64,000 nt of DNA from IMGVR_UViG_3300027747_002221:124001-188000, one strand, 5' to 3'; positions 14,134-39,518 are shown, counted from the stretch's first letter. The notes: generated by a model from the letters alone, not told the origin. Translations and numbers: made by a program.

Positions 14134-14884
14134 TATCGTTTTCCTTAGTCCAGGTTACAATTTCCCATCGTCCATTATAATGTTCAACAAGAGCAGTACA
14201 AGATTCAACCCAGTCTCCGTCGTTCATATATATGATTCCATCAATCTCTTTAATCTCAGCATGATGTATATGTCCACAAATAACTCCATCATACCCTCGC
14301 TTTTTACAATATCCTGCGAGGTTGTTTTCAAACTGAAACATAAAGTCTGATGCTTTTTTTACTCTATGTTTTAAATACTTAGATAACGACCAATATCCAA
14401 ATCCAAATTTATGACGAACCCAATTAAAACGAGAATTCCAATCTAGAACTAAATCGTATAACTTATCGCCTAGAAATGCTAACCAAGGTGCAAGTCTAGT
14501 AATACCATCAAATAAATCACCGTGCGTTATCAGGTAGTGTTTACCATCAACACCTATATGTTCCGTTTGATTTTTTATTTCAATTAAACCAAAACTGAAA
14601 CCATATGGTATCATTGGCCTTAAGAATTCATCATGATTACCAGCAATGTAGATTACTCTTGTACCTCGTTTAGCGTGTCCAAGAATTCTTCGTACAACAT
14701 TGGTATGAGATTGCTTCCACCGCCATTTATTCTGTTGTATTTTCCATACATCAATAATATCACCTACAAGATATAAAGTCTCGCAAGTATTATGTTTTAA
14801 AAAATTATTTAACTTATCAGCTTGACAATCTCGAGTACCTAAATGAACATCACTTATGAATATTGTTTTATAGGTTCTTTGCAT
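14081..14884 (-). CDS. PlcP-like phospholipase C (LpxH/LpxH2-family metallophosphoesterase)
   Basis: TIFISDVHLGTRDCQA, LYLVGDIID, GNHDEFLR, HGDLFD, WLAFLGD, YWSLS, DGVICGHIHHA, NDGDWVESCTA. Confidence 0.85.
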   Translation of the reverse strand: MQRTYKTIFISDVHLGTRDCQADKLNNFLKHNTCETLYLVGDIIDVWKIQQNKWRWKQSHTNVVRRILGHAKRGTRVIYIAGNHDEFLRPMIPYGFSFGLIEIKNQTEHIGVDGKHYLITHGDLFDGITRLAPWLAFLGDKLYDLVLDWNSRFNWVRHKFGFGYWSLSKYLKHRVKKASDFMFQFENNLAGYCKKRGYDGVICGHIHHAEIKEIDGIIYMNDGDWVESCTALVEHYNGRWEIVTWTKENDNESSKNSKEVVSSVYQS

Positions 14885-14897
14885 AAGTTACCTTTAA

Positions 14898-15213
14898 ATT
14901 AATGATAGGTTATTCTGTTACGAGGAAACCTACCGAAACCCTAAGCAGTGTTTAGGCTGCTAATGCGAACTGTTCGTCGTTTGCGTTTACGTTTTTTGCT
15001 TGATTAACGGTCATCGCCTACCGTGCTGTCCACGCTGTTACTATTTGCCCTGTCGAAACCAATGTCAGGCCCATTAGAAAGAACTCTTTAGTATAGTCTA
15101 TAGCACTTGTCTGTCTCTATACAGGATGAAAAATTCTTTCTGGTGGACCTGGCGGGAGTCGAACCCGCGTCCAGAACATATTTCTCTTTGCTTCATACAG
15201 CAATAACTTACTC
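14898..15213 (-). ncRNA. ssrA: tmRNA, circularly permuted two-piece form
   Basis: Minus strand: T-arm GCGGG-TTCGACT-CCCGC and ...CAGGTCCACCA (ends 15141) come before GGGCCTGACATTGGTTTCGACAGG (starts 15072); 7-bp acceptor stem with G3:U; tag frame ANDEQFALAA-TAA (14984-14952). Outer ends are approximate. Confidence 0.95.
14901..14950 (-). repeat. Direct repeat copy A (3' part of the tmRNA coding piece)
   Basis: See 13240-13289. Confidence 0.92.
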
Positions 15214-15315
15214 TTTTACATTATAAAAAAGACTTTTTGCTATCCAGAACATATAGTTGACTACAACTAAGATGCCCCACATATAAACCCAATGCCAATT
15301 TTCAAACATAAGAAC

Positions 15316-26831: not shown

Positions 26832-26860
26832 ATTATAACACCTTTTGTGGAAGATGTCAA
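26832..26860 (-). promoter_or_regulatory. sigma70-type early promoter
   Basis: TTGACA-17-TATAAT, extended -10. Confidence 0.92.
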
Positions 26861-26865
26861 GCAAT

Positions 26866-26885
26866 AAGTGGGCCGAAGCCCACTT
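26866..26885 (-). terminator. Intrinsic terminator with cUUCGg loop
   Basis: AAGTGGGC-TTCG-GCCCACTT on the minus strand. Confidence 0.82.
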
Positions 26886-26886
26886 T

Positions 26887-27303
26887 TTAAGCAACTCCGG
26901 CTACTTTTTCTTTTGTTCTGCCATAAGCAGCAATTCCAAGAACAGCACCCATTGCAATATGGTATAACCCTGCACCCTGAAGGGTTAATGGCATCCATTG
27001 GCTTGTAACTTGTCCTGCAGACATTGCTTGTAGCATCGACCACAAGATCGGAAACAATACAAAGTCACATGTACAAGTTAACATATAAATCCAACCCATC
27101 ATGGGTCGCATTTTCTTATTGATCCAATCAGTAGAATCCTTATCCAATGCTACTGTGGACTCACCACCTTGACTTAATGCACCACCGCCGCTTTTGAGCA
27201 TCTCAGGATTACCAGATTGGAATCCATTTGGTGGTACTGCATTTGTATTAAATGGTGTAGGGTTTTTTACTTCAGCTGCTGCGTGAGAATCCCAATCTGC
27301 CAT
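26887..27303 (-). CDS. Holin-like membrane protein (3TM/GTA-holin type)
   Basis: MRPMMGWIYM...WMPLTLQGAGLYHIAMGAVLGIAAYGRTKEK. Confidence 0.65.
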   Translation of the reverse strand: MADWDSHAAAEVKNPTPFNTNAVPPNGFQSGNPEMLKSGGGALSQGGESTVALDKDSTDWINKKMRPMMGWIYMLTCTCDFVLFPILWSMLQAMSAGQVTSQWMPLTLQGAGLYHIAMGAVLGIAAYGRTKEKVAGVA

Positions 27304-28712: not shown

Positions 28713-28886
28713 TTAGGACACTATACGGTATGGGTCTCCTGCCATATCCTCGTGGTAACGCTGTTCGTCTAGATATGCGATACCTTGCTCTACGAGCTCT
28801 ACGTCTACACCTAGCATAACCGCTATGCTATATGCGTTATACCCCTGGTCCATTAGAGGTTCTATATCTATGATCAGATCTTTCAT
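28713..28886 (-). CDS. Small HTH-like protein (57 aa)
   Basis: Manual: MKDLIIDIEPLMDQGYNAYSIAVMLGVDVELVEQGIAYL... Confidence 0.65.
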   Translation of the reverse strand: MKDLIIDIEPLMDQGYNAYSIAVMLGVDVELVEQGIAYLDEQRYHEDMAGDPYRIVS

Positions 28887-28895
28887 GCTATACCC

Positions 28896-29153
28896 TTATG
28901 CGTATTCGTAGAACTTAACTGTGGGGTCTAATGCTGTCAATTGCTTCGCAACTTTGGTCAACTGCTTGTGACGGGCAATAACTGTTGCTCGGGGCAACTC
29001 GCCATCGCAGGTCAAGTTCTCAGGGGATAAATCTGAGTCGATCATATCGGCAATGCGCTGACGGTCTTCTCGAGATGCTAGGCTCAGACCTTTCTTGTTG
29101 AATATCGCATTCCACGAGTTCTTTTGATTCACGTACTCTTTGAGTTCTTTCAT
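28896..29153 (-). CDS. Hypothetical early protein
   Basis: Start corrected to MKELKE (AGGAG SD, promoter upstream). Confidence 0.7.
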   Translation of the reverse strand: MKELKEYVNQKNSWNAIFNKKGLSLASREDRQRIADMIDSDLSPENLTCDGELPRATVIARHKQLTKVAKQLTALDPTVKFYEYA

Positions 29154-29178
29154 GCTTGCTCCTTTGTTACTATGTCTT

Positions 29179-29207
29179 ATTATAACACCGTTTGGTACGA
29201 AAGTCAA
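29179..29207 (-). promoter_or_regulatory. sigma70-type early promoter
   Basis: TTGACT-17-TATAAT, extended -10. Confidence 0.9.
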
Positions 29208-29233
29208 CAATAACCCTTTGGGATACTGGGGTA

Positions 29234-29262
29234 TTGACTCCTGCCCCTTTTGGTGTTATAAT
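29234..29262 (+). promoter_or_regulatory. Plus-strand sigma70-type promoter, antisense to the ATPase gene
   Basis: TTGACT-17-TATAAT with GGTGT immediately before the -10. Confidence 0.75.
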
Positions 29263-30164
29263 TACGCACCTTGAGTAATAACATACTTAGCCAAGTTCTT
29301 CCAATTGCCACCCTCTGCGCGAATCTTTGTCGTTGCTATCAGAGTACGCAAACTCAAATTCTTGATGCTGTTCATGTTGTCGCGCAAAAAGTTGATTGCG
29401 TCTGCTTTGTACGCTGTACTGTATTCCTCGAGAAACTCAGGATCTGCTACAAGCACTTCCATGCGCTCGATCTTTTGACCTTGCGTCATGCTTAGGTCAA
29501 CGCACATTGCTCGCGAACGAACTGCTTGGTCTAAACGCTCGAGGTCTTTGTTTGAGATGAAAATAATTGTACCTGTGAACTTGAATGACCTGGGCAGATC
29601 CTCGTCTTTCATATCTGCGTTCCAGCTGATCCAACGCTCGCCGTATGAGTCAAGAGCGCCTTTAAGCAAATTCAATGCTACGGGGTCTGTCAACACACTG
29701 TCACAGTCGTCAAACACTAGCACTTGGCCGTTGCCTTCGAACAGCGTACGATACAAGCCCTTTGCTGTAGAGAAGCCTTTAATCACCTTATAAGACTTAG
29801 GTGTATTAATGCGAGCACCTACCTCAAACTTAGTGAGGTCTGTGGTGTCTGCCATGCCGTTGGTCTTAAGAGCTTTCAACACCGTGTGCGTCTTACCCAG
29901 GCCGCCTTGACCTGTGATAATTGCTGATGCGATTGTCTTTTTAGCGACCATGCCGACCATCTGCTCTACGAATTCAAAGCGCTCGTTGATACCAAATTCG
30001 GATGCCTTCTCAGTCACATCGTTCTGCACCTGACCTACCACAAAGCCCAGCTTTGCTAACTGGTCTTTTACATAAGATTCGTGTCGTGAGCGTGATACCA
30101 TTTTGCCATCTACGAAACCCTCGAAACGATTCTTGGTGCTGTTGAACTTGACTGCTATTTCCAT
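29262..30164 (-). CDS. AAA+/P-loop ATPase
   Basis: Walker A GQGGLGKT, Walker B VLVFDDCD, IIFISN, AVRSRA; start corrected to MEIAVK. Confidence 0.85.
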   Translation of the reverse strand: MEIAVKFNSTKNRFEGFVDGKMVSRSRHESYVKDQLAKLGFVVGQVQNDVTEKASEFGINERFEFVEQMVGMVAKKTIASAIITGQGGLGKTHTVLKALKTNGMADTTDLTKFEVGARINTPKSYKVIKGFSTAKGLYRTLFEGNGQVLVFDDCDSVLTDPVALNLLKGALDSYGERWISWNADMKDEDLPRSFKFTGTIIFISNKDLERLDQAVRSRAMCVDLSMTQGQKIERMEVLVADPEFLEEYSTAYKADAINFLRDNMNSIKNLSLRTLIATTKIRAEGGNWKNLAKYVITQGA

Positions 30165-30194
30165 TTTGTTTCCTTTTTGCTGTAACATGTCTTA

Positions 30195-30223
30195 ATTATA
30201 TGTGCTTTTGATTAAGCTGTCAA
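30195..30223 (-). promoter_or_regulatory. sigma70-type early promoter
   Basis: TTGACA-17-TATAAT. Confidence 0.9.
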
Positions 30224-30405
30224 CCAAAAACCCTTTGAGCATCAGGGTCATTCTCATAATACTCATTCTCGGCATCTTCGAATATAGCGTTGGTCTCAGA
30301 CCAGAGCTCTAGCTCGCTGACATCTATAGTGGGTCTGGTCTCATATAAGCATCCTAAGACCATACTGATTTGAGTATCAGTTAATTGTATTGTTACTTTT
30401 CTCAT
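30220..30405 (-). CDS. Hypothetical early protein
   Basis: 61 aa, ATGA overlap. Confidence 0.6.
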   Translation of the reverse strand: MRKVTIQLTDTQISMVLGCLYETRPTIDVSELELWSETNAIFEDAENEYYENDPDAQRVFG

Positions 30406-30557
30406 AGTGATTCCTCATATACAATTTCGTCTATAGCACATGCTAAAGCATTAAACGCATTTTGCACAGCATCATTTTCGTCTAAACCGAGTTCGTCTAA
30501 AGCATTTTGCACGCTAATTAATAAGCTGTCTAATTGTTGTTTTTGTAAATTTTGCAT
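30402..30557 (-). CDS. Small acidic early protein
   Basis: Start corrected to MQNLQK (AGGA SD). Confidence 0.62.
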   Translation of the reverse strand: MQNLQKQQLDSLLISVQNALDELGLDENDAVQNAFNALACAIDEIVYEESL

Positions 30558-30584
30558 TTTGTTTCCTTTTCTTAATATGCCTCT

Positions 30585-30613
30585 ATTATAGCACAATTTG
30601 GTGAACCTGTCAA
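30585..30613 (-). promoter_or_regulatory. sigma70-type early promoter
   Basis: TTGACA-17-TATAAT. Confidence 0.9.
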
Positions 30614-30645
30614 CCAATAACCCTATACCCTTACGGGTTATAATG

Positions 30646-30822
30646 TTACTTGCTATAATCATCTACAAAATGCATCAGCTCCTCGTAAACGCACTCATAT
30701 GCATCTGTCATTACGCTATCCAAATCATCATAGTTATCACTACAATATTTGACTGCTTCTGTAATTGAGAGACCGTTGTCTCTAGCAAAATTTGCAAATA
30801 CTACTAGGGGATGCTTACTCAT
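30646..30822 (-). CDS. Small acidic early protein (58 aa)
   Basis: Manual: MSKHPLVVFANFARDNGLSITEAVKYC...; SD and promoter upstream. Confidence 0.65.
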   Translation of the reverse strand: MSKHPLVVFANFARDNGLSITEAVKYCSDNYDDLDSVMTDAYECVYEELMHFVDDYSK

Positions 30823-30856
30823 TTTTAATTTCCTTTTCTTTTCTTAATATGCCGCT

Positions 30857-30885
30857 ATTATAGCACATTCTGACCAAACCGTCAA
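30857..30885 (-). promoter_or_regulatory. sigma70-type early promoter
   Basis: TTGACG-17-TATAAT. Confidence 0.88.
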
Positions 30886-30971
30886 GCAAAGACCCTATAG
30901 CCGAGTAGGACATAGGGTTTTTAAAAATGCAAAAGAATGCAAATTGCAAAACTATTGTATGGGGGATTCTG

Positions 30972-31095
30972 ATAGGCGATTGCTATAATAGAGAATGCCT
31001 ATCGGTTCCTGGATTCTGATAGTCTCCGTCTATAATAGAAGCCGCCTATGGGAAATGCTCTGCAATAGACACAGACTATAATAGTCGCAGGCTAT
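30972..31095. repeat. Three spaced repeats ATAG-N7-CTAT-A-ATAG-N7-CTAT (period 47/46 bp); candidate iterons
   Basis: Units at 30972-31002, 31019-31049 and 31065-31095, in a non-coding gap of about 400 bp next to an AT-rich tract. Confidence 0.85.
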
Positions 31096-31291
31096 GAGGT
31101 TTTGATTTCAAATTTAAAAAATTAATAATAAACTCCGGGATTCTTCACCATATACACACTTTTACGCCATATAAATACCGTCTAATATAGGCTCGATTAT
31201 ACGAGCTCTTGCGAGTTCTAGATAATGCAAATCACGATTCTAGCAGCATCTTATATTGCGTTTAACTATTATAGCAACATAATACTTAACT

Positions 31292-31441
31292 CTACATTCC
31301 ATGTCTTGAGGCAACTTTTCGATCCATCTCTGAGCGCAACTCTGTAGGCAACTCTATACGTGATCCTATAGCCATGCCTATACCGTATCCTAATAGAAAC
31401 CCTATAAAAAGGCCTAATACTATGCACATAACGTATTCCAT
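31292..31441 (-). CDS. Small membrane protein (49 aa)
   Basis: Manual: MEYVMCIVLGLFIGFLLGYGIGMAIGSR... Confidence 0.5.
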   Translation of the reverse strand: MEYVMCIVLGLFIGFLLGYGIGMAIGSRIELPTELRSEMDRKVASRHGM

Positions 31442-31613
31442 ATTATAAAGTACTTTCTAGTTCTTTGATTCGATTGTTCATATTATCCCCAAATACTTTG
31501 ATATATTGCGTAGAAAAAGACAAACATGGTCATAAAGAAAAGCAAAGGTTGCAATATGATAAACCATAAGAACATTATGATAAAATCCGGGTTTAAATAT
31601 TTTAAATATTTTT

Positions 31614-31796
31614 TCATTTTTCAATCCTTACACATCGCATATTCACATATCCTTTTTTACCCTTTGCATCCGCTTCAAATGCACGAATAGCCTGTTCACA
31701 TTTTTCAAAGGTATTAAATTCCATTGTGGGAATCACTGTATTGGTAAAATGCCCATTACTGTTTAACACAATCAAAACAAATACAATAGTGTTCAT
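31614..31796 (-). CDS. Hypothetical protein
   Basis: 60 aa, GGAG SD. Confidence 0.6.
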   Translation of the reverse strand: MNTIVFVLIVLNSNGHFTNTVIPTMEFNTFEKCEQAIRAFEADAKGKKGYVNMRCVRIEK

Positions 31797-31933
31797 TCTT
31801 CAAACTCCAAAAAGATATAGTATGGTACTATTAGTATACCTGTTATCGTCATCAATGCGATGCCGGCCATTAGGTATACTAGATAAAATGGTGTTAGTAC
31901 CCATTCAATTAAATCAACATCAAGACTCATCAT

Positions 31934-32359
31934 TTACTCCCAAGTTCTATGAACTTCTGCAATATGCTCAAGTCCATCATATTCTTCAACAGTATATTCA
32001 ACACCGTCAGGAATATCCACAACTCTCAGGTTGGCGCAATGACCATTGGCAACATCACCTAGTTCTTCAACTACTTGGGCCAATACTGGGTCGTGACGTT
32101 CAATATCTCGTTCATAAAACGATTGTTCAGAACACAATTTATTATATGCTTGGCGATCATTCATAGGCATTGCATAAAATGCTTCACCTTCTTTTCTCTC
32201 AACACGATCTTCTGATTTTACCAACCAATAGGTCCAGAATCCCCAATAACTTTTATCCTGTTCTGGGTAAACAACAATATCTTTAATTTCAAGATATCGC
32301 ATAACAGCTTCGTGACTCAAGTTAAAGCCACCATAACATTTATTGATTACTACTTTCAT
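31934..32359 (-). CDS. Conserved phage hypothetical protein
   Basis: MKVVINKCYGGFNLSHEA...RHDPVLAQVVEELG...VEEYDGLEHIAE. Confidence 0.75.
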   Translation of the reverse strand: MKVVINKCYGGFNLSHEAVMRYLEIKDIVVYPEQDKSYWGFWTYWLVKSEDRVERKEGEAFYAMPMNDRQAYNKLCSEQSFYERDIERHDPVLAQVVEELGDVANGHCANLRVVDIPDGVEYTVEEYDGLEHIAEVHRTWE

Positions 32360-32361
32360 TA

Positions 32362-32760
32362 TCAATCTCCAAAAACTGTTCCACGTTGTTGCTCATAATC
32401 ATAGAATGCTACTAGCTTAGCTGGCTCGTTATTTTCTGGCTTAGCATAATAAACAGTTAAGCCACCTAGATCACGCGATGCATAAAACTGCGTCTCGTTA
32501 AAAATAGTAAGTTCAGCTAACACTTCTAGCTCATCAGAATACTCACGATCGCTGTAGTCTATAGTATAGACTTTAGTGTTATTAATTTTCTCAGATTCTT
32601 TGTCAGTTATTTGATGCACAATGTTGCCCTCGTTTACGTTGGTCTGAAGTTTGTTGAATGCATAATACAAATGCTTCACGTCTGCATCGTCAGAGTACTT
32701 GCCATATACTTTGTCGATAGCTGAAAACATATACTGAAAGTGTTGTTGCTGTGTCTGCAT
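32362..32760 (-). CDS. Hypothetical early protein
   Basis: 132 aa, GGAG SD, promoter upstream. Confidence 0.7.
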   Translation of the reverse strand: MQTQQQHFQYMFSAIDKVYGKYSDDADVKHLYYAFNKLQTNVNEGNIVHQITDKESEKINNTKVYTIDYSDREYSDELEVLAELTIFNETQFYASRDLGGLTVYYAKPENNEPAKLVAFYDYEQQRGTVFGD

Positions 32761-32786
32761 AGTATTCTCCGAGTTGCTAGATCTTA

Positions 32787-32815
32787 ATTATAACACCTTT
32801 GGCATTCTATGTCAA
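32787..32815 (-). promoter_or_regulatory. sigma70-type early promoter
   Basis: TTGACA-17-TATAAT, extended -10. Confidence 0.92.
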
Positions 32816-32829
32816 GCGCTTTCTAGCAT

Positions 32830-33024
32830 TCAATCTCTATCCACTCCAACGCAGATATAGGACTTTCGGTTATCCTGATTTTTCTTGGACAACCGTTTTT
32901 CCTCTCTAAAGCATTCTGTCCAATTATCATAATACTTTAGTGGTTCATACCTAAGATCAACCTTTTGAGTTGTTGGATCCTGTGTAAGAATGGCTACTAC
33001 TAATACTATATCTGGAAAAATCAT
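32830..33024 (-). CDS. Hypothetical protein
   Basis: Likely start MIFPDIVLV. Confidence 0.55.
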   Translation of the reverse strand: MIFPDIVLVVAILTQDPTTQKVDLRYEPLKYYDNWTECFREEKRLSKKNQDNRKSYICVGVDRD

Positions 33025-33028
33025 ATTG

Positions 33029-33256
33029 TTAAATGTAAAAACATTCTCCGCGTTTGTCTGCACCGATAGAATCATACACATACTCACGGACAACAGTATC
33101 CAATGCCTCGCCGTATAGATCATGGTTGCTATCTGCTAATTGCACAAGTTCTTCGTATGTTTGTGCCCAAGTATAATTATTTTGTATTGCTCGCAACACA
33201 ATGCCGTGAATTTCGTTGTTGCCTTCAGGTGAATACATTCCGTAATTGTTTACCAT
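33029..33256 (-). CDS. Hypothetical protein
   Basis: 75-aa ORF. Confidence 0.6.
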   Translation of the reverse strand: MVNNYGMYSPEGNNEIHGIVLRAIQNNYTWAQTYEELVQLADSNHDLYGEALDTVVREYVYDSIGADKRGECFYI

Positions 33257-33564
33257 GCCAATTCCTTTGCTTTAAATCTGATCTGACCTTCATACTCAAA
33301 CTGAGACTTCTCAAAGTCTGTCATATAGTCGTTATCAACCAATTCCCATCCCATCACCTCACGGCGAAAGTATTCGCTGTTCTCTTCAATCTGACTGCGA
33401 AGAGCCATGACCGCTTCGGTGGCTTCTTTCTCACCGCCTTTAAACTTGGGCACAAAGAAGTCTTCGCCACCTTTGAACTTCCAATACTGGGGGCACTCAC
33501 CTTTGCCGTCCCAATCATGTGCGCCATAGTTCTCTTGATCCTGTGTCCAAATGTGCAATTTCAT
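33250..33564 (-). CDS. Conserved phage hypothetical protein
   Basis: MKLHIWTQDQENYGAHDWDGKGECPQYWKFKGG; AGGA SD. Confidence 0.72.
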   Translation of the reverse strand: MKLHIWTQDQENYGAHDWDGKGECPQYWKFKGGEDFFVPKFKGGEKEATEAVMALRSQIEENSEYFRREVMGWELVDNDYMTDFEKSQFEYEGQIRFKAKELAW

Positions 33565-33594
33565 TGTCTGTTCCTTTTTGCTGTTCATGTCATT

Positions 33595-33623
33595 ATTATA
33601 ACACCTTTTGGTCAACCAGTCAA
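33595..33623 (-). promoter_or_regulatory. sigma70-type early promoter
   Basis: TTGACT-17-TATAAT, extended -10. Confidence 0.92.
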
Positions 33624-33654
33624 GAAAAACCCTGCACAGAGCAGGGTTACTATA

Positions 33655-33680
33655 GGTAATAAAAAGGTTTTACCTTTTAG
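33655..33680. repeat. 26-bp exact repeat (also at 36066-36091) containing an AAAAGGT-TTT-ACCTTTT hairpin
   Basis: ggtaataaaaaggttttaccttttag at both positions. Confidence 0.9.
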
Positions 33681-33877
33681 AGATACGTATCTATTTGAGA
33701 TCCCTTAGCTCTAATAGCTTGTATAAAGGCTCTTTGTGTATAAATGATGTCTGCAACTGTCGCGACGAATTGCGTATTTTGCACTTCCACTCTTTCAGGT
33801 AAAGAATGTGCATCTGTACGTCTAAGTTCAGTCACAAGGTTAATAGTAGGGACAACTTCTGCAGAATGAATTCTCAT
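33677..33877 (-). CDS. Hypothetical protein
   Basis: 66 aa, ATGA overlap. Confidence 0.55.
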   Translation of the reverse strand: MRIHSAEVVPTINLVTELRRTDAHSLPERVEVQNTQFVATVADIIYTQRAFIQAIRAKGSQIDTYL

Positions 33878-34011
33878 GTTATAATTTCTTTTATAATATC
33901 TAATGCTATACGAACTGTGTCTAAATCTACGTTTAGACTGGCAGCAATTTCTAGTACATCAAATTTACGTTCAAATAGCTCTCTAATTTGATTTAATAGG
34001 TCTCTTTTCAT
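33874..34011 (-). CDS. Small HTH-like protein (45 aa)
   Basis: Manual: MKRDLLNQIRELFERKFDVLEIAASLNVDLDTVRIALDII...; AGGA SD. Confidence 0.65.
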   Translation of the reverse strand: MKRDLLNQIRELFERKFDVLEIAASLNVDLDTVRIALDIIKEIIT

Positions 34012-34140
34012 TGTAAATTCCTTTTAGTTATTTATACCAACCCCTTAGAGAGATATAGGTGCCGTCAGTATACTCTGCTTCTATTGAGAATGCGCAAAGG
34101 CATACAAGATAAACAAAAATCCATAATAGTGATCTAAACA

Positions 34141-34323
34141 TTACATTTCACCTGCTTGCTGTTGTCGAATATACTCTCCATATAAAAGATTGTATGCTTT
34201 TTGTATTTCATCAGATAGAATAGTTGCATCTTTTTCAATTTGATTAGCAATGGCATTTGCCAATGCTCTGGATAAAAAAATCTCTCGTGTATGCCCAGTA
34301 GGTTCGATTTCAACATTACTCAT
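34141..34323 (-). CDS. Hypothetical protein
   Basis: Likely start MSNVEI. Confidence 0.55.
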   Translation of the reverse strand: MSNVEIEPTGHTREIFLSRALANAIANQIEKDATILSDEIQKAYNLLYGEYIRQQQAGEM

Positions 34324-34732
34324 ACTCTTCTTCCTCATAACTAGGAGTAGTTTCAATTACTACATGACCAAACTGAATTCTTCCGTCCCAATCAGATTCG
34401 CCTCGACCACCCACGGTCACAAAATCCTCATCAAATTCAAGAATAGCGCCTACATCTAAAAATTGGTCAAAATTATCAACATACTTGATATCGTCTAAAA
34501 GAATACAACCAATTGATCCTGAATCTACACTATATGAAAAGCCATAATGATCATGGTATGTTCCATCACCATATGCTGTGCTGTACATTGCAAATCTACG
34601 ACCATCTTTTAATTGAAATTCGCCTTCAAGGACTCGTGTACCCTGTATGGTGATATCACAAATATCTAGCCATTCATCATCGGCCATTACATAGCACAAG
34701 TCGCCAATATAATATTTTCCTGCTGGCATCAT
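34316..34732 (-). CDS. Conserved phage hypothetical protein
   Basis: PAGKYYIGDLCYV...TAYGDGTY...VDSGSIGCI. Confidence 0.72.
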   Translation of the reverse strand: MMPAGKYYIGDLCYVMADDEWLDICDITIQGTRVLEGEFQLKDGRRFAMYSTAYGDGTYHDHYGFSYSVDSGSIGCILLDDIKYVDNFDQFLDVGAILEFDEDFVTVGGRGESDWDGRIQFGHVVIETTPSYEEEEYE

Positions 34733-34734
34733 AA

Positions 34735-35004
34735 TTACAACACTCCTAGTTGTTTCTGAATAACGTAAACAATTTCTTCACGCATACCTGAAGTCATTTC
34801 AAGATATGCCCATGCTGGAAGATATTCATCTAAACGATGTATATCTAAGGGTTTTGGTTGAGCCTGTTTAGTATATTCTTCTAGTTGATCCAGTGTAAAT
34901 GCCCAGTTTGGTCCTTCGACCTCGGCACCCACACTCGATGCTAGTTTTACAATATCTAATCTATTCAAGAAGTTTCTCCGACTGATTCTACAATACGTTG
35001 CCAC
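34735..35004 (-). CDS. Hypothetical protein
   Basis: 89-aa ORF. Confidence 0.55.
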   Translation of the reverse strand: MATYCRISRRNFLNRLDIVKLASSVGAEVEGPNWAFTLDQLEEYTKQAQPKPLDIHRLDEYLPAWAYLEMTSGMREEIVYVIQKQLGVL

Positions 35005-35132
35005 CGATATGCAACAACATTCTCAACCATAGTTACGGGGATATCCAAAACTGCAGCAATTTCATCAATCATAAGATTTGTGCTGCTAAGCAGATCATTA
35101 ATCTCTGCATCCAATTCTGACATTTTACTCAT
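34965..35132 (-). CDS. Small HTH-like protein (55 aa)
   Basis: MSKMSELDAEINDLLSSTNLMIDEIAAVLDIPVTMVENVVAY; AGGAG SD. Confidence 0.68.
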   Translation of the reverse strand: MSKMSELDAEINDLLSSTNLMIDEIAAVLDIPVTMVENVVAYRWQRIVESVGETS

Positions 35133-35142
35133 AGTTTGCTCC

Positions 35143-35412
35143 TTAAAATAAATCAACTTGAACTTGCTTACCTATTTGAGTCGTATTGTAACTGGTCATA
35201 CCACAACCTGTTGGTAACGCCTCACCTTTTCTCTTTGCCTCATAACGCAAATGCGACAAACGCAAAACACCATCGCACGCAGCCTGCCGAAGACTATGAG
35301 TGGCAAACACGCTGGCAACACCACCTACAGTTGTGTAGATTCCAAACCCATCAATTATCACACGGATTTTCTGTGAGTTCTTAAAACCATCGATGAAAGT
35401 CTTTGTACGCAT
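35143..35412 (-). CDS. Hypothetical protein
   Basis: Likely start MRTKTF. Confidence 0.6.
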   Translation of the reverse strand: MRTKTFIDGFKNSQKIRVIIDGFGIYTTVGGVASVFATHSLRQAACDGVLRLSHLRYEAKRKGEALPTGCGMTSYNTTQIGKQVQVDLF

Positions 35413-35413
35413 T

Positions 35414-35623
35414 TTAATCCTTCTTAGGGAAACGAGCAGTCGGGTCAACTAACTTCTTCATACCTGAATTTGATTTGCCTCGAGCTGAGACTGGCTTAGG
35501 ATTTTTGCGACCTTTCAGAACTTCTACAGTTCCGCCGTTAGCTAAAAACTTTGCTAGTGCATCTTCTTGCATTTCTCGTGCTACATCCTTGGGGACTACT
35601 GGGAGATCTTTTACTTCTTGCAT
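35414..35623 (-). CDS. Small basic early protein
   Basis: 69 aa, AGGA SD, promoter upstream. Confidence 0.65.
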   Translation of the reverse strand: MQEVKDLPVVPKDVAREMQEDALAKFLANGGTVEVLKGRKNPKPVSARGKSNSGMKKLVDPTARFPKKD

Positions 35624-35649
35624 CTTGTTTCCTTTTTTGCTATGTGCTT

Positions 35650-35678
35650 ATTATAACATCTAATGGAAAATTACTCAA
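35650..35678 (-). promoter_or_regulatory. sigma70-type early promoter
   Basis: TTGAGT-17-TATAAT. Confidence 0.82.
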
Positions 35679-35702
35679 GCAATAACCATTAGAGTTAACG
35701 GG

Positions 35703-36008
35703 TTACTGTGTATTTAATGTTGGTAAGCACTCACCAATAAGCTGACGCTCAATAGCATGTGCTGCAACTTTACCTCTCACTACAGCTAATTGCTGTGCCA
35801 CGAATGATTCTGGACCAAAAGAGCGAATTGCTTCGCACAATGTCCAGGATTTGCCCTCAGTCAATGCCCGTCGTACATGCTTTTGCACACGTATTTTCAG
35901 ATCACGCTGACGAAATCCCTGCGTAATGCCTATATAGAAATCGCCTGTGACACAATTGGTCAGGCAATATACTATATGTCTACGATCAATTCTCTTTTTT
36001 CTTTTCAT
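35703..36008 (-). CDS. Stand-alone GIY-YIG nuclease domain protein
   Basis: HIVYCLTNCVTGDFYIGIT...R.QKH...AIRSFG.ESF. Confidence 0.8.
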   Translation of the reverse strand: MKRKKRIDRRHIVYCLTNCVTGDFYIGITQGFRQRDLKIRVQKHVRRALTEGKSWTLCEAIRSFGPESFVAQQLAVVRGKVAAHAIERQLIGECLPTLNTQ

Positions 36009-36014
36009 GCTATA

Positions 36015-36043
36015 ATTATAACACCTTTTGGCAAACTTGTCAA
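36015..36043 (-). promoter_or_regulatory. sigma70-type early promoter
   Basis: TTGACA-17-TATAAT, extended -10. Confidence 0.92.
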
Positions 36044-36065
36044 GTATAACCCGTCAGAGAGTAAG

Positions 36066-36091
36066 GGTAATAAAAAGGTTTTACCTTTTAG
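36066..36091. repeat. Second copy of the 26-bp repeat
   Basis: Identical to 33655-33680. Confidence 0.9.
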
Positions 36092-36306
36092 GTTTGTGTT
36101 CCAAACTTATCAGTTTCGTAAGCCCAGTGTACTGTGATCCAATCATCAATACACATTCTTTCAGTTATTTTAGGATCTGCAGGTATATTTTTGCCCGCCT
36201 TTGCCATTAACTCATACCATTTTGGAAAGTATGAAGTTAGTATTGTGTTTTCTGATAGTGTAACCGATACATCCATATCAGGTTCAGAATAAGACCAATA
36301 TTTCAT
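36088..36306 (-). CDS. Hypothetical protein
   Basis: 72-aa ORF. Confidence 0.62.
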   Translation of the reverse strand: MKYWSYSEPDMDVSVTLSENTILTSYFPKWYELMAKAGKNIPADPKITERMCIDDWITVHWAYETDKFGTQT

Positions 36307-36563
36307 TAATCATTACTCTTTTCGTGCAGTTTAGGTTGATAGAATCTTTTTTCCTGAATAGTTAATTCTTTAAAGATTTTCCTAGGGCTTGCACACATAA
36401 TACATTTAGGATTGCCACAGTCCAAAGCATGCTGTTTGACAAACTTGTGTGGTTCCTTTACATCTATACCGTGTGACTTGGCAATCTTTGTTTGCTTTTT
36501 GATATGGACTTCATCCTGATGAAGTCTTGAACTATGTTTTAGTTTGTCCTGTTCCGCGCTCAT
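36306..36563 (-). CDS. Conserved hypothetical protein with C-x4-C-x2-C motif
   Basis: HALDCGNPKCIMCASPRK; start MSAEQD. Confidence 0.68.
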   Translation of the reverse strand: MSAEQDKLKHSSRLHQDEVHIKKQTKIAKSHGIDVKEPHKFVKQHALDCGNPKCIMCASPRKIFKELTIQEKRFYQPKLHEKSND

Positions 36564-39464: not shown

Positions 39465-39493
39465 ATTATATAGGACTTGACTAGGTTTGTCAA
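39465..39493 (-). promoter_or_regulatory. sigma70-type early promoter
   Basis: TTGACA-17-TATAAT. Confidence 0.9.
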
Positions 39494-39495
39494 GC

Positions 39496-39518
39496 GACCC
39501 GGACAACTAATCCGGGTC
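39496..39518. terminator. Perfect inverted repeat GACCCGGA-N7-TCCGGGTC (terminator or binding site)
   Basis: Read directly; separates the late block from the early block. Confidence 0.6.

What the first reader, a model, noticed from the sequence alone, without database searches (positions are those of the whole stretch)
29179..36091. Repeated promoter cassettes, seven with an upstream TAACCC-N11-GGGTTA palindrome
Seen: 13 minus-strand TTGA(C/G)N-17-TATAAT promoters lie between 20492 and 39493. Seven of them (29179, 30195, 30585, 30857, 33595, 35650, 36015) have, about 3-4 bp beyond the -35, a dyad of consensus TAACCC-N11-GGGTTA with a variable spacer (exact at 30618-30640; AAACCC-N11-GGGTTA after 33623). 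Known: PeSL (promoter early stem-loop) cassettes mediate modular shuffling in T4-type phages. Inference: fixed arms with a one-turn variable spacer look more like a dimeric regulator site at the class II activator position than a terminator, defining an early sub-regulon. Some copies can also fold as hairpins.
Basis: partly seen in the sequence, partly recalled or inferred. Interest (0 to 1): 0.65.

Follow-up and report, generated by a model that had tools for sequence, protein, structure and literature searches.

The report
Hairpin-plus-promoter cassettes in a T4-like phage
The repeated palindromes are the stem-loop halves of terminator-promoter cassettes (PeSLs, already known from T4-type phages) that flank small early genes in an uncultivated freshwater T4-like phage and mark where these genes are swapped between strains; they do not look like a regulator's binding site.

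Summary
All 13 minus-strand TTGA(C/G)N-17-TATAAT promoters exist. Seven have a dyad 3-6 nt upstream of the -35. The conserved core is only ACCC...GGGT. The spacer is 11 in four copies, 12 in two and 19 in one.

The window lies in a 222-kb T4-like phage from freshwater metagenomes. Each dyad belongs to an 80-110-nt repeated cassette: hairpin, U-rich tail, strong promoter, conserved leader and ribosome site. The cassettes sit between ORFan genes.

In 120 distinct promoters from this phage and its relatives, 55 carry the dyad. Spacers are 11-13 or 19-21. Distance to the -35 is 6-7 or 14-15. A T-rich run nearly always follows the dyad. All long-spacer copies are stable hairpins. A 10-bp helix across 39 N11 copies shows covariation. 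More distant relatives carry a well-formed ACCC-TAC-N5-GTA-GGGT hairpin fused to a different promoter type, so N11 looks like inherited stem-loop geometry.

Strain variants break and rejoin inside the cassettes. This matches PeSLs (Arbiol 2010; Comeau 2014). The class II activator reading is not supported: the dyad centre is near -51, and both spacing and phasing vary. Whether the weak copies terminate transcription was not testable. Verdict: new member of a known kind.

The parts
29151..29233 (-). Cassette 1. Dyad 29211-29233 (TACCCC-N11-GGGTTA, or ACCC-N12-GGGT); -35 TTGACT 29202-29207; -10 TATAAT 29179-29184; 25-nt leader with AAGGAG; ATG 29151-29153 of an 85-aa ORFan.
   Evidence: hairpin dG about -3.5 to -10 kcal/mol
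30162..30250 (-). Cassette 2, in front of the AAA-type gene 29262-30164. Dyad 30228-30250 (TGACCC-N11-GGGTTT); -35 30218-30223; -10 30195-30200; ATG 30162-30164. It is a chimera: the dyad half matches another cassette type in L011, and the leader half matches the AAA-gene cassettes of L008 and L012. ORF 30220-30405 reads through the dyad and stops at the TGA inside the -35.
30555..30640 (-). Cassette 3. Exact TAACCC-N11-GGGTTA at 30618-30640, which can also fold as TATA(A)CCC-GTAA-GGGTATA; -35 30608-30613; -10 30585-30590; ATG 30555-30557.
   Evidence: (repeat D3)
30820..30918 (-). Cassette 4. Long hairpin ACCCTAT-N13-ATAGGGT at 30892-30918 (ACCC-N19-GGGT, dG about -12 to -13 kcal/mol), followed by CTTTGC; -35 TTGACG 30880-30885; -10 30857-30862; ATG 30820-30822 of a 58-aa ORFan. 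It is a tandem paralogue of cassette 3 (79% over 82 nt, 272 nt apart).
   Evidence: (D3); a natural variant lacks 30583-30854
33562..33680 (-). Cassette 5. Extra AT-rich hairpin after the stop codon (33655-33680, AAAGGT-AAA-ACCTTT); dyad 33627-33649, which is the 8-bp stem AACCCTGC-TCTGT-GCAGGGTT plus TTTTC (dG -13.7 kcal/mol). This is the only window copy that meets a simple terminator rule. -35 33618-33623; -10 33595-33600; ATG 33562-33564.
   Evidence: (D4, D15)
35621..35705 (-). Cassette 6. Decayed dyad 35683-35705 (TAACCC-N11-TGGTTA). Its TAA is the stop codon of the GIY-YIG ORF. -35 TTGAGT 35673-35678; -10 35650-35655; ATG 35621-35623. The L021 counterpart (same upstream sequence; L021 244-348 matches window 35734-35629) is the intact hairpin TAACCCTTT-N5-AAAGGGTTT.
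36006..36091 (-). Cassette 7. A 26-nt copy identical to 33655-33680 at 36066-36091; dyad 36047-36069 (ACCC-N12-GGGT; dG about -4 kcal/mol); -35 36038-36043; -10 36015-36020; ATG 36006-36008 only 6 nt after the -10 (leaderless start). Its loop resembles the intact hairpin ACCC-TAC-TCTCT-GTA-GGGG of L022.
   Evidence: (D4, D15)
39465..39517 (-). Eighth related unit. Strong hairpin AGACCCGGA-N5-TCCGGGTC (39497-39517, dG about -18 kcal/mol) lies 3 nt upstream of a perfect TTGACA-17-TATAAT promoter.
29234..29262 (+). Mirror-image promoter TTGACT-17-TATAAT on the opposite strand, abutting dyad 1 and pointing antisense into the AAA-type gene. The dyad therefore sits between two back-to-back promoters.
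   Evidence: (I1); weaker in L010; absent from L008 and L009, where the stop codon directly precedes the dyad
35703..36008 (-). Stand-alone 101-aa GIY-YIG nuclease-domain ORF lying between cassettes 7 and 6.
   Evidence: phrog_5123 E=1.1e-7; homologues in L018 and L019 pass the Pfam PF01541 cut-off; it lies on the opposite strand in L019
26965..26987 (.). Exact TAACCC-N11-GGGTTA that is not part of the system. It lies inside a conserved coding sequence, and its arms vary at synonymous sites in relatives.
26832..26885 (-). For comparison: a promoter of the same family preceded by an unrelated terminator hairpin, AAGTGGGC-TTCG-GCCCACTT (26866-26885).
   Evidence: orthologues in L010 and L011 keep the hairpin with different stem sequences

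Best explanation
The dyads are the stem-loop modules of PeSL-type cassettes: a hairpin with a U-rich tail, then a strong sigma70-type early promoter, then a conserved leader and ribosome site. The cassettes separate small ORFan genes in a hyperplastic early region of an uncultivated freshwater T4-like phage.

Inferred mechanism: as RNA, the hairpin plus UYWUU tail attenuates or terminates transcription coming from the upstream module and caps that module's 3' end. The promoter then re-initiates, so each ORFan is an insulated expression unit.

Shown here: the 80-110-nt cassettes are near-repeats, and strain variants have their junctions inside them, so ORFan modules are deleted, swapped, re-ordered and inverted there. 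That homologous recombination between cassettes causes this is inferred.

Also inferred: the fixed arms and one-turn spacer are inherited geometry. The ancestral form is an ACCC-TAC-(5-nt loop)-GTA-GGGT hairpin. Many copies in this phage have lost the inner stem and kept only the GC clamp next to the U-tract.
For: T4-like phage: Gp23 at 470 bits; structural protein about 40% identical to T4-like cyanophage proteins; major capsid protein about 66% identical to Pelagibacter and Methylophilales myophages.

Cassettes are paralogous repeats spanning dyad, promoter and leader (D1-D4, D15). The flanking ORFs have no Pfam family.

Family survey: 55 of 120 distinct promoters carry the dyad. The T-rich tail after GGG is T53/55, Y, W, T47/55, T46/55.

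Upstream ORF stop codons lie before or inside the dyad in 41 of 42 cases.

All 14 long-spacer copies have dG of -9.4 kcal/mol or lower, and their loops add stability (z = -2.7). 8 of 41 short copies are canonical stems.

Covariation: a 10-bp helix over 39 N11 copies is 78% paired. The score is 0.172 against 0.122 in shuffles (1 of 500 reach it) and at most 0.10 in slid controls. 6 of 10 pairs show changes on both sides.

More distant relatives carry well-formed ACCC-TAC-N5-GTA-GGGT hairpins fused to a different promoter type, GTTTACTTTAAT...TATAAT.

Shuffling:
- Homology with four relatives starts exactly at the -35 of cassette 2.
- Cassette 2 is a chimera with its crossover in the promoter.
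- Metatranscriptome contigs show joints 30582>30855 (deletes the ORF between tandem cassettes; 13 nt shared), 30183>33593 and 30869>30219. Six loose ends also fall inside cassettes.

Published PeSLs have the same architecture, lineage-specific conserved stems and a demonstrated terminator function (PMC2839356, PMC4122927).
Against: Only one of the seven window copies passes a simple terminator rule.

33 of 41 short-spacer copies have only 4-8 paired arm bases around a 9-12-nt loop (median dG -7.2 kcal/mol). Their loops are no more structured than shuffled loops.

Other strong terminators in the same genome use varied stems. So the ACCC/GGGT arms are conserved as sequence, beyond what hairpin stability requires.

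In L019, and at window 29211-29233, the dyad lies between divergent promoters. In L019 nothing obvious is there to terminate.

No transcript 3' ends could be read, because all runs are kept as contigs.
Confidence: 0.62

Rival explanations
1. One reading: the dyad is the operator of a dimeric activator or repressor that co-regulates a subset of early promoters.
For: The ACCC/GGGT arms are conserved as sequence while the spacers vary. Generic terminators of the genome do not share them. Most short copies are weak hairpins. Some dyads lie symmetrically between divergent promoters. In two promoters (genome position 33875; L014/L021) the arms bracket the -35.
Against: Arm spacing is 11, 12 or 13 in similar numbers, plus 19-21. 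Distance to the -35 is 6-7 or 14-15 nt, a shift of about 8 nt that would move a bound protein to a different face of the helix. The centre is near -51 or -60, not -41.5. The arms covary like base pairs. The T-tail and the A-rich stretch before GGG are asymmetric. The nested double-stem versions do not fit one protein geometry. No candidate regulator was found among the adjacent ORFs.
Confidence: 0.06
2. The conserved stem is a recognition or cleavage site, as a DNA hairpin or cruciform, for a phage recombination or structure-specific nuclease. That nuclease would actively promote cassette excision, insertion and inversion. Arbiol et al. speculated this for GGGG...CCCC stems. The cassette-embedded stand-alone GIY-YIG protein would be one candidate.
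For: The arms are conserved as sequence across clades with two different promoter types. Inverted arrangements pivot on the dyad: window 29234/29207, and L019 882/929, where the GIY-YIG module is flipped. A GIY-YIG domain ORF sits between two cassettes. The published speculation is in PMC2839356.
Against: The junctions that could be placed are scattered over the -35, the promoter spacer, the -10 and the leader rather than at one point in the dyad. That fits homologous recombination. The GIY-YIG ORF is absent from most related loci that carry cassettes. No biochemical evidence exists.
Confidence: 0.12
3. The hairpin acts mainly after transcription. It would be a 3'-end protective cap or an RNase processing site that sets mRNA half-lives, with little termination.
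For: The short stems are too weak for efficient termination. The dyads lie at or over stop codons. Covariation supports pairing but does not say what the pairing is for.
Against: A conserved U-rich tail directly after the stem is the signature of intrinsic termination. PeSL stem-loops tested in RB49 were effective terminators (PMC2839356).
Confidence: 0.12
4. The weak copies are decaying relics with no present function. They persist only because they are dragged along with the promoter during cassette recombination.
For: Cassette 6 has lost an arm base relative to its L021 counterpart. The inner stems of cassettes 1, 2 and 7 are gone relative to distant relatives. One ORF now reads through a dyad.
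Against: A at -1 (51 of 55 copies) and T at +1 (53 of 55) flanking the CCC/GGG cores, and the tail Ts (46-47 of 55), are conserved about as well as the promoter hexamers, while the loops are free. That argues for continued selection.
Confidence: 0.08

Closest known systems
PeSLs (promoter-early stem-loops) of T4-type phages: RB49/phi1 (Arbiol et al. 2010, PMC2839356) and PST/T4, nt-1/KVP40 (Comeau et al. 2014, PMC4122927)
   Same: A composite intergenic cassette with the stem-loop directly upstream of a near-consensus sigma70 early promoter, followed by a Shine-Dalgarno site and start codon. It is repeated many times in an ORFan-rich hyperplastic region. The stem consensus is lineage-specific (nt-1: A3-4G3-loop-C3T3-4; here A-ACCC-loop-GGGT-T). 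Indels, replacements and re-orderings between close relatives have their junctions inside the cassettes.
   Different: The stem polarity differs (C-run 5', G-run 3'). In the window the dyad abuts the -35 (3-6 nt) with no AT-rich block between them. Most copies have lost the inner stem, leaving 4-8 bp arms around an 11-12-nt loop. The same hairpin occurs in sister clades on a GTTTAC-type promoter. The host lineage is a freshwater 'far-T4' phage related to Pelagibacter and Methylophilales myophages, not an enterobacterial or Vibrio phage. Terminator activity and mini-circles were not tested here.
Rho-independent (intrinsic) terminators
   Same: A GC-rich stem base followed at once by a U-rich tract, placed at or just after stop codons, partly mirrored by an A-rich 5' flank. 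The stem shows covariation.
   Different: Most window copies have loops of 9-12 nt and dG above -8 kcal/mol, so they fall outside the usual rules. The arm sequence is conserved rather than free.
Class I/II activator sites and palindromic operators (for example CRP at -41.5 or -61.5)
   Same: A short inverted repeat upstream of the -35, with a spacer of about one helical turn in many copies.
   Different: The spacing and the phasing to the promoter vary. The arms covary. The flanks are asymmetric. The centre is at about -51 or -60.
Integron attC sites
   Same: An imperfect palindrome with conserved ends and a variable centre, at the 3' end of small gene cassettes that are shuffled. This is an analogy only.
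   Different: There is no GTTRRRY/RYYYAAC core and no integrase or attI. Each cassette here carries its own promoter. The junctions are spread along the cassette, as in homologous recombination.

Membership tests
PeSL cassette | Resides in a T4-type phage genome | tested here: met
   Gp23 PF07068 at 470 bits in the same 222-kb record. T4-like structural protein and major capsid protein relatives.
PeSL cassette | Near-consensus sigma70-type early promoter | tested here: met
   Met at sequence level: TTGAC(A/T/G)-17-TATAAT with TGn extended -10 in all seven copies. Promoter activity was not measured.
PeSL cassette | Stem-loop-forming sequence directly upstream of the promoter, with a lineage-typical conserved stem | tested here: met
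   Dyads lie 3-6 nt from the -35. 55 of 120 family promoters carry one. The helix covaries. Stability ranges from -3.5 to -13.7 kcal/mol across the seven window copies (about -18 at the eighth unit, 39493).
PeSL cassette | The stem-loop works as a transcription terminator or attenuator | not testable with these tools
   Only assembled contigs of RNA runs were available, so no 3' ends could be read. Sequence proxies are mixed: the U-rich tail is present, but only 1 of 7 copies passes a simple rule.
PeSL cassette | [quoted passage not shown] | tested here: not met
   In the window the gap is only TTG, TTGG, TTC, TAC or CTTTGC. 18 copies in relatives do have TTTGAAAAAGAT-type blocks, at 14-15 nt from the -35.
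PeSL cassette | Shine-Dalgarno site and start codon of the next gene at the 3' end | tested here: met
   Conserved leaders CAT(A/G)...AAAGGA(A/G)-N5-8-ATG in six copies. The seventh is leaderless.
PeSL cassette | Clustered in a hyperplastic region of ORFans | tested here: met
   All dyad cassettes of the genome lie between window positions 29151 and 39517. The neighbouring ORFs have no Pfam family. Gene content differs between close relatives.
PeSL cassette | Indels and replacements between close relatives have junctions in the cassettes | tested here: met
   three joints and six loose ends inside cassettes; homology blocks start or end at 30223, 30840 and 33679; chimeric cassette.
PeSL cassette | Mini-circles formed between neighbouring cassettes | not testable with these tools
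   This needs inverse PCR or raw reads with circular junctions.
Dimeric transcription-factor operator (class II activator) | Fixed half-site spacing | tested here: not met
   Spacing is 11 (18 copies), 12 (19), 13 (4) and 19-21 (14). In the window it is 11, 12 or 19.
Dimeric transcription-factor operator (class II activator) | Fixed position and helical phase relative to the promoter (centre -41.5) | tested here: not met
   The centre is about -51 in the window. The distance from GGG to the -35 is 6-7 (32 copies) or 14-15 (18 copies) in the family.
Dimeric transcription-factor operator (class II activator) | A cognate DNA-binding protein | not tested
   No HTH-type family was found among ten adjacent ORFs. 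No binding data exist.
Intrinsic terminator | Stable GC-rich stem with a short loop, followed by a U-tract | tested here: inconclusive
   The U-tract is met. The stem-and-loop rule is met by 1 of 7 window copies. In the family, all 14 long copies and 8 of 41 short copies are well-formed stems.

The most novel reading that the evidence does not exclude
The ACCC...GGGT stem may not be only a relaxed terminator. It may be a sequence-specific handle, read as a DNA or RNA hairpin by a phage protein such as a structure-specific nuclease or recombination helper. One candidate is the small GIY-YIG protein embedded in the cassette array. Such a protein would actively drive excision, insertion and inversion of promoter-bearing ORFan modules, giving a promoter-carrying counterpart of integron attC sites in T4-like phages. 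This would explain three things: why the arms are conserved across clades that use different promoter types, why the inner stem may decay, and why some dyads sit between mirror-image promoters.
Probability: 0.12. Interest if true: 0.7.

Novelty: new member of a known kind. Interest (0 to 1): 0.34.

Why it matters
It extends PeSL-type terminator-promoter cassettes from cultured enterobacterial and Vibrio T4 phages to an abundant uncultivated freshwater lineage. A phage-borne beta-type tmRNA suggests the host is a betaproteobacterium.

Independent lake metagenomes and metatranscriptomes show natural strain variants whose junctions lie inside the cassettes. That is field evidence for cassette-mediated modular shuffling.

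The work also gives a concrete, testable puzzle. The 4-bp GC clamp and the spacing of the hairpin are conserved across clades with different promoter types, while the inner stem decays.

Tried and rejected
- Megablast of the region against cultured phages found no match.
- Rfam found no family in 28800-36400, even at E up to 1.
- MotA and AsiA families were not found. The controls also stayed silent, so absence is not shown. By position, the TGCTTGAC upstream context is not a MotA-box promoter.
- I tested whether the cassettes act as three-frame stop traps. They close no more reading frames than promoters without a dyad, so I rejected the idea.
- I tested whether ACCC/GGGT is simply this genome's usual terminator stem. 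Other strong terminators use both polarities and varied sequences, so I rejected that too.
- A position-by-position covariation test on the close clade alone was weak (p = 0.02-0.3). It became clear only when the N11 copies of the distant clade were added.
- RNA runs could not show transcript starts or ends, because all are kept as contigs and depth is low.
- The exact palindrome at 26965-26987 was rejected as a family member.
- A PDB sequence search with the GIY-YIG ORF gave nothing meaningful.

Full report
**Context.** The window is bases 124001-188000 of a 222,055-bp IMG/VR virus record with 35.6% G+C. The record is a T4-like phage. It encodes a Gp23 major capsid protein (PF07068, 470 bits). 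A 989-aa virion protein is about 40% identical to proteins of T4-like cyanophages. The capsid protein is about 66% identical to those of Pelagibacter phage HTVC008M and the Methylophilales Melnitz phages. Near-identical DNA occurs in many freshwater and lake metagenomes. A betaproteobacterial-type tmRNA gene in the window (RF01850, 134 bits) hints at the host.

**Check of the observation.** All 13 minus-strand TTGA(C/G)N-17-TATAAT promoters are present at the stated places. They belong to a genome-wide set of 33 very strong minus-strand promoters with a conserved spacer and a TGn extended -10, consensus gcTTGACA...CAAAAGGTGTTATAAT.
- The dyad TAACCC-N11-GGGTTA is exact at 30618-30640.
- It has one mismatch at 29211-29233, 33627-33649 and 35683-35705, and two mismatches at 30228-30250 and 36047-36069.
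- The seventh copy, at promoter 30885, is ACCC-N19-GGGT (30892-30918).
- Two others read better as N12.
- An eighth promoter (39493) has a strong ACCCGGA...TCCGGGT hairpin 3 nt upstream.

The motif is enriched: 10 matches against 2.3 +/- 1.45 in shuffles. In the genome, 7 of 26 minus-strand ACCC-N3-21-GGGT sites end 3-6 nt before a strong -35. The other exact match (26965-26987) is a coding-sequence coincidence. It encodes ...PLTLQGAGLY..., and its arms vary synonymously in relatives.

**Anatomy.** Each dyad is the 5' part of an 80-110-nt repeated cassette made of dyad, promoter and a conserved leader (CAT(A/G)...AAAGGAA-N-ATG).
- Pairs of cassettes are 77-79% identical over about 80 nt.
- Two cassettes share an extra, identical 26-nt AT-rich hairpin after the stop codon.
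- The ORFs between cassettes are short and have no Pfam family. One exception is a 101-aa stand-alone GIY-YIG domain protein.
- Upstream ORFs end before the dyad, in its 5' arm (TAA-CCC) or in its loop (TAA or TGA just before AGGGT).
- One ORF (30220-30405) reads through the dyad and stops at the TGA inside the -35, because a TAA seen in relatives is CAA here.

**Relatives.** I used the AAA-type protein (29262-30188) as an anchor and fetched 44 related loci. Loci with at least 72% identity use the same promoter type. I pooled 120 distinct promoters from the genome and these loci. Of these, 55 have a CCC...GGG dyad ending within 20 nt of the -35.
- Spacer lengths are 11 (18 copies), 12 (19), 13 (4) and 19-21 (14).
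- The distance to the -35 is 6-7 nt (32 copies) or 14-15 nt (18 copies).
- The profile is A-n-n-A-CCC ... R-A-A-GGG-T-Y-W-T-T. The T-rich tail is present in almost all copies and is stronger than its A-rich mirror on the 5' side.
- All 14 long-spacer copies are stable hairpins (dG of -9.4 kcal/mol or lower, loops contributing, z = -2.7). Some are nested ACCC-N-ACCC-GTAA-GGGT-N-GGGT stems or 13-15-bp stems with G-U pairs.
- Only 8 of 41 short copies have an extended stem. The rest pair through the arms alone (median dG -7.2 kcal/mol).
- In the window, only the 33623 copy meets a simple terminator rule.

More distant relatives (anchor identity 50-61%) carry the same element as a well-formed hairpin, ACCC-TAC-(5 nt)-GTA-GGGT. 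There it is fused to a different, T4-early-like promoter, GTTTACTTTAAT...TATAAT. This accounts for the N11: 3 + 5 + 3 nt of inner stem and loop. Several window loops are recognisable decayed versions. For example, cassette 7 has ACCC-T-TAC-TCTCT-GAC-GGGT, against ACCC-TAC-TCTCT-GTA-GGGG in L022.

On a gap-free alignment of 39 N11 copies, a 10-bp helix is 78% paired. Six of the ten pairs show changes on both sides. The covariation score is 0.172, against 0.122 in shuffles (1 of 500 reach it) and at most 0.10 when the partners are slid.

**Operator or hairpin.** Several results speak against a dimeric regulator at a class II site and for a base-paired hairpin with a terminator-like tail:
- The arm spacing varies.
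- The distance to the -35 has two modes about 8 nt apart, which is not a helical repeat.
- The centre lies near -51 or -60 rather than -41.5.
- The flanks are asymmetric.
- Nested double stems exist.
- The arms covary.

Three points remain in favour of sequence-specific recognition. The ACCC/GGGT clamp is conserved as sequence, while other strong terminators of the genome use varied stems. Most short copies are weak hairpins. And some dyads lie between mirror-image promoters: window 29234(+)/29207(-), and L019 882(-)/929(+). In L019 the GIY-YIG module is inverted and nothing obvious transcribes into the dyad.

**Shuffling.**
- Homology between the window and L008, L010, L011 and L012 begins exactly at the -35 of cassette 2. 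Other blocks end in the leader of cassette 4 (30840) and at the stop codon before cassette 5 (33679).
- Cassette 2 is a chimera. Its dyad half matches another cassette type in L011, and its leader half matches the AAA-gene cassettes of L008 and L012.
- Contigs from four lake metatranscriptome runs show a 272-nt deletion joining the tandem cassettes 4 and 3 (30582>30855, 13 shared nt). This removes the 58-aa ORF between them.
- The same runs show a join of the leaders of cassettes 5 and 2 (30183>33593), a re-ordered arrangement (30869>30219), and six loose ends inside promoter or leader segments.
- The junctions are spread over the cassette, which fits homologous rather than site-specific recombination.

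These contigs cannot show transcript ends or strand, so termination itself is untested.

**Comparison with the known.** This matches the published PeSLs of T4-type phages: a stem-loop shown to terminate in RB49, a sigma70-like early promoter, a Shine-Dalgarno site, clustering in ORFan-rich hyperplastic regions, lineage-specific conserved stems, and indels at the cassettes (PMC2839356, PMC4122927). Arbiol et al. already speculated that the conserved stem might be bound by a recombination protein.

The differences here are:
- the C-then-G polarity of the stem;
- the dyad abutting the -35 without an AT-rich block;
- widespread decay of the inner stem;
- the same hairpin on two promoter types in sister clades;
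- the phage lineage. In a T4-like cyanophage, S-PM2, only a few candidate stem-loops were seen (PMC4503421).

**Verdict.** This is a real, non-random feature, best read as a new member of the PeSL kind. The regulator-site inference is not supported. An open question remains: why the 4-bp clamp and the spacing are kept while the inner stem decays. 

Noticed in passing
window 14879-15244 (-): The phage carries a tmRNA gene of betaproteobacterial type (RF01850 at 134 bits; it also matches the permuted tmRNA model). ARAGORN reads the tag peptide as ANDEQFALAA. This is a hint that the host is a freshwater betaproteobacterium.
   Followed up: partly
window 29234-29262 (+): A full mirror-image copy of the early promoter (TTGACT-17-TATAAT with TGn) sits back-to-back with promoter 29207 across the dyad and points antisense into the AAA-type gene. 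It is weaker in L010. In L008 and L009 it is absent and the stop codon directly precedes the dyad. It could produce an antisense RNA, or it could be a scar of an inversion at the palindrome.
   Followed up: partly
window 30920-31300: About 400 bp have no convincing ORF. They hold two tandem 42-nt units (30964-31005 and 31011-31052), each with an internal inverted repeat (GATAGGC...GCCTATC around TCTATTATAG). The stretch is conserved in L008 (85%) and covered by metatranscriptome contigs. It might be a small RNA or an origin-like element. No Rfam family matches.
   Followed up: no
window 35703-36008 (-); L019 545-847 (-); L018 1526-1828 (+): A stand-alone 101-aa GIY-YIG nuclease-domain ORF has its ATG 6 nt after the -10, so the mRNA is probably leaderless. 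It is fused in the same way to a promoter cassette in three lineages. In L019 it lies on the opposite strand, so the module appears to move or flip together with its cassette.
   Followed up: partly
window 30220-30405 (-): This ORF runs through dyad 2 and ends at the TGA inside the -35 hexamer. In L010 and L011 the homologous ORF stops at a TAA in the loop; the window has CAA at that position.
   Followed up: yes
window 33655-33680 and 36066-36091: Two identical 26-nt copies (CTAAAAGGTAAAACCTTTTTATTACC on the minus strand) form a second, AT-rich hairpin between the stop codon and the dyad. The sequence resembles an inverted, degenerate copy of the GGGTA...AAAAAGGTTGACA flank seen in L019 and L020.
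   Followed up: partly
L022-L046 (for example L027 546-572, L030 7863-7889, L022 7934-7960): Relatives whose anchor protein is only 50-61% identical carry the same ACCC-TAC-N5-GTA-GGGT hairpin. There it directly abuts a different early promoter type (GTTTACTTTAAT-N-TATAAT), so the -35 itself forms the U-tract.
   Followed up: partly
genome position 33875 (outside the window); L014 88; L021 7966: In these promoters TAACCC lies 5 nt upstream of the -35 and (A/G)GGT(T/A) lies directly after it. The dyad arms therefore bracket the -35 hexamer. Many cassette promoters also have GGTT or GGGT right after TTGAC(A/G).
   Followed up: no
window 26965-26987: This exact TAACCC-N11-GGGTTA lies inside a conserved membrane-protein-like coding sequence. 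It is a chance match, and it shows that a single exact palindrome proves little.
   Followed up: yes
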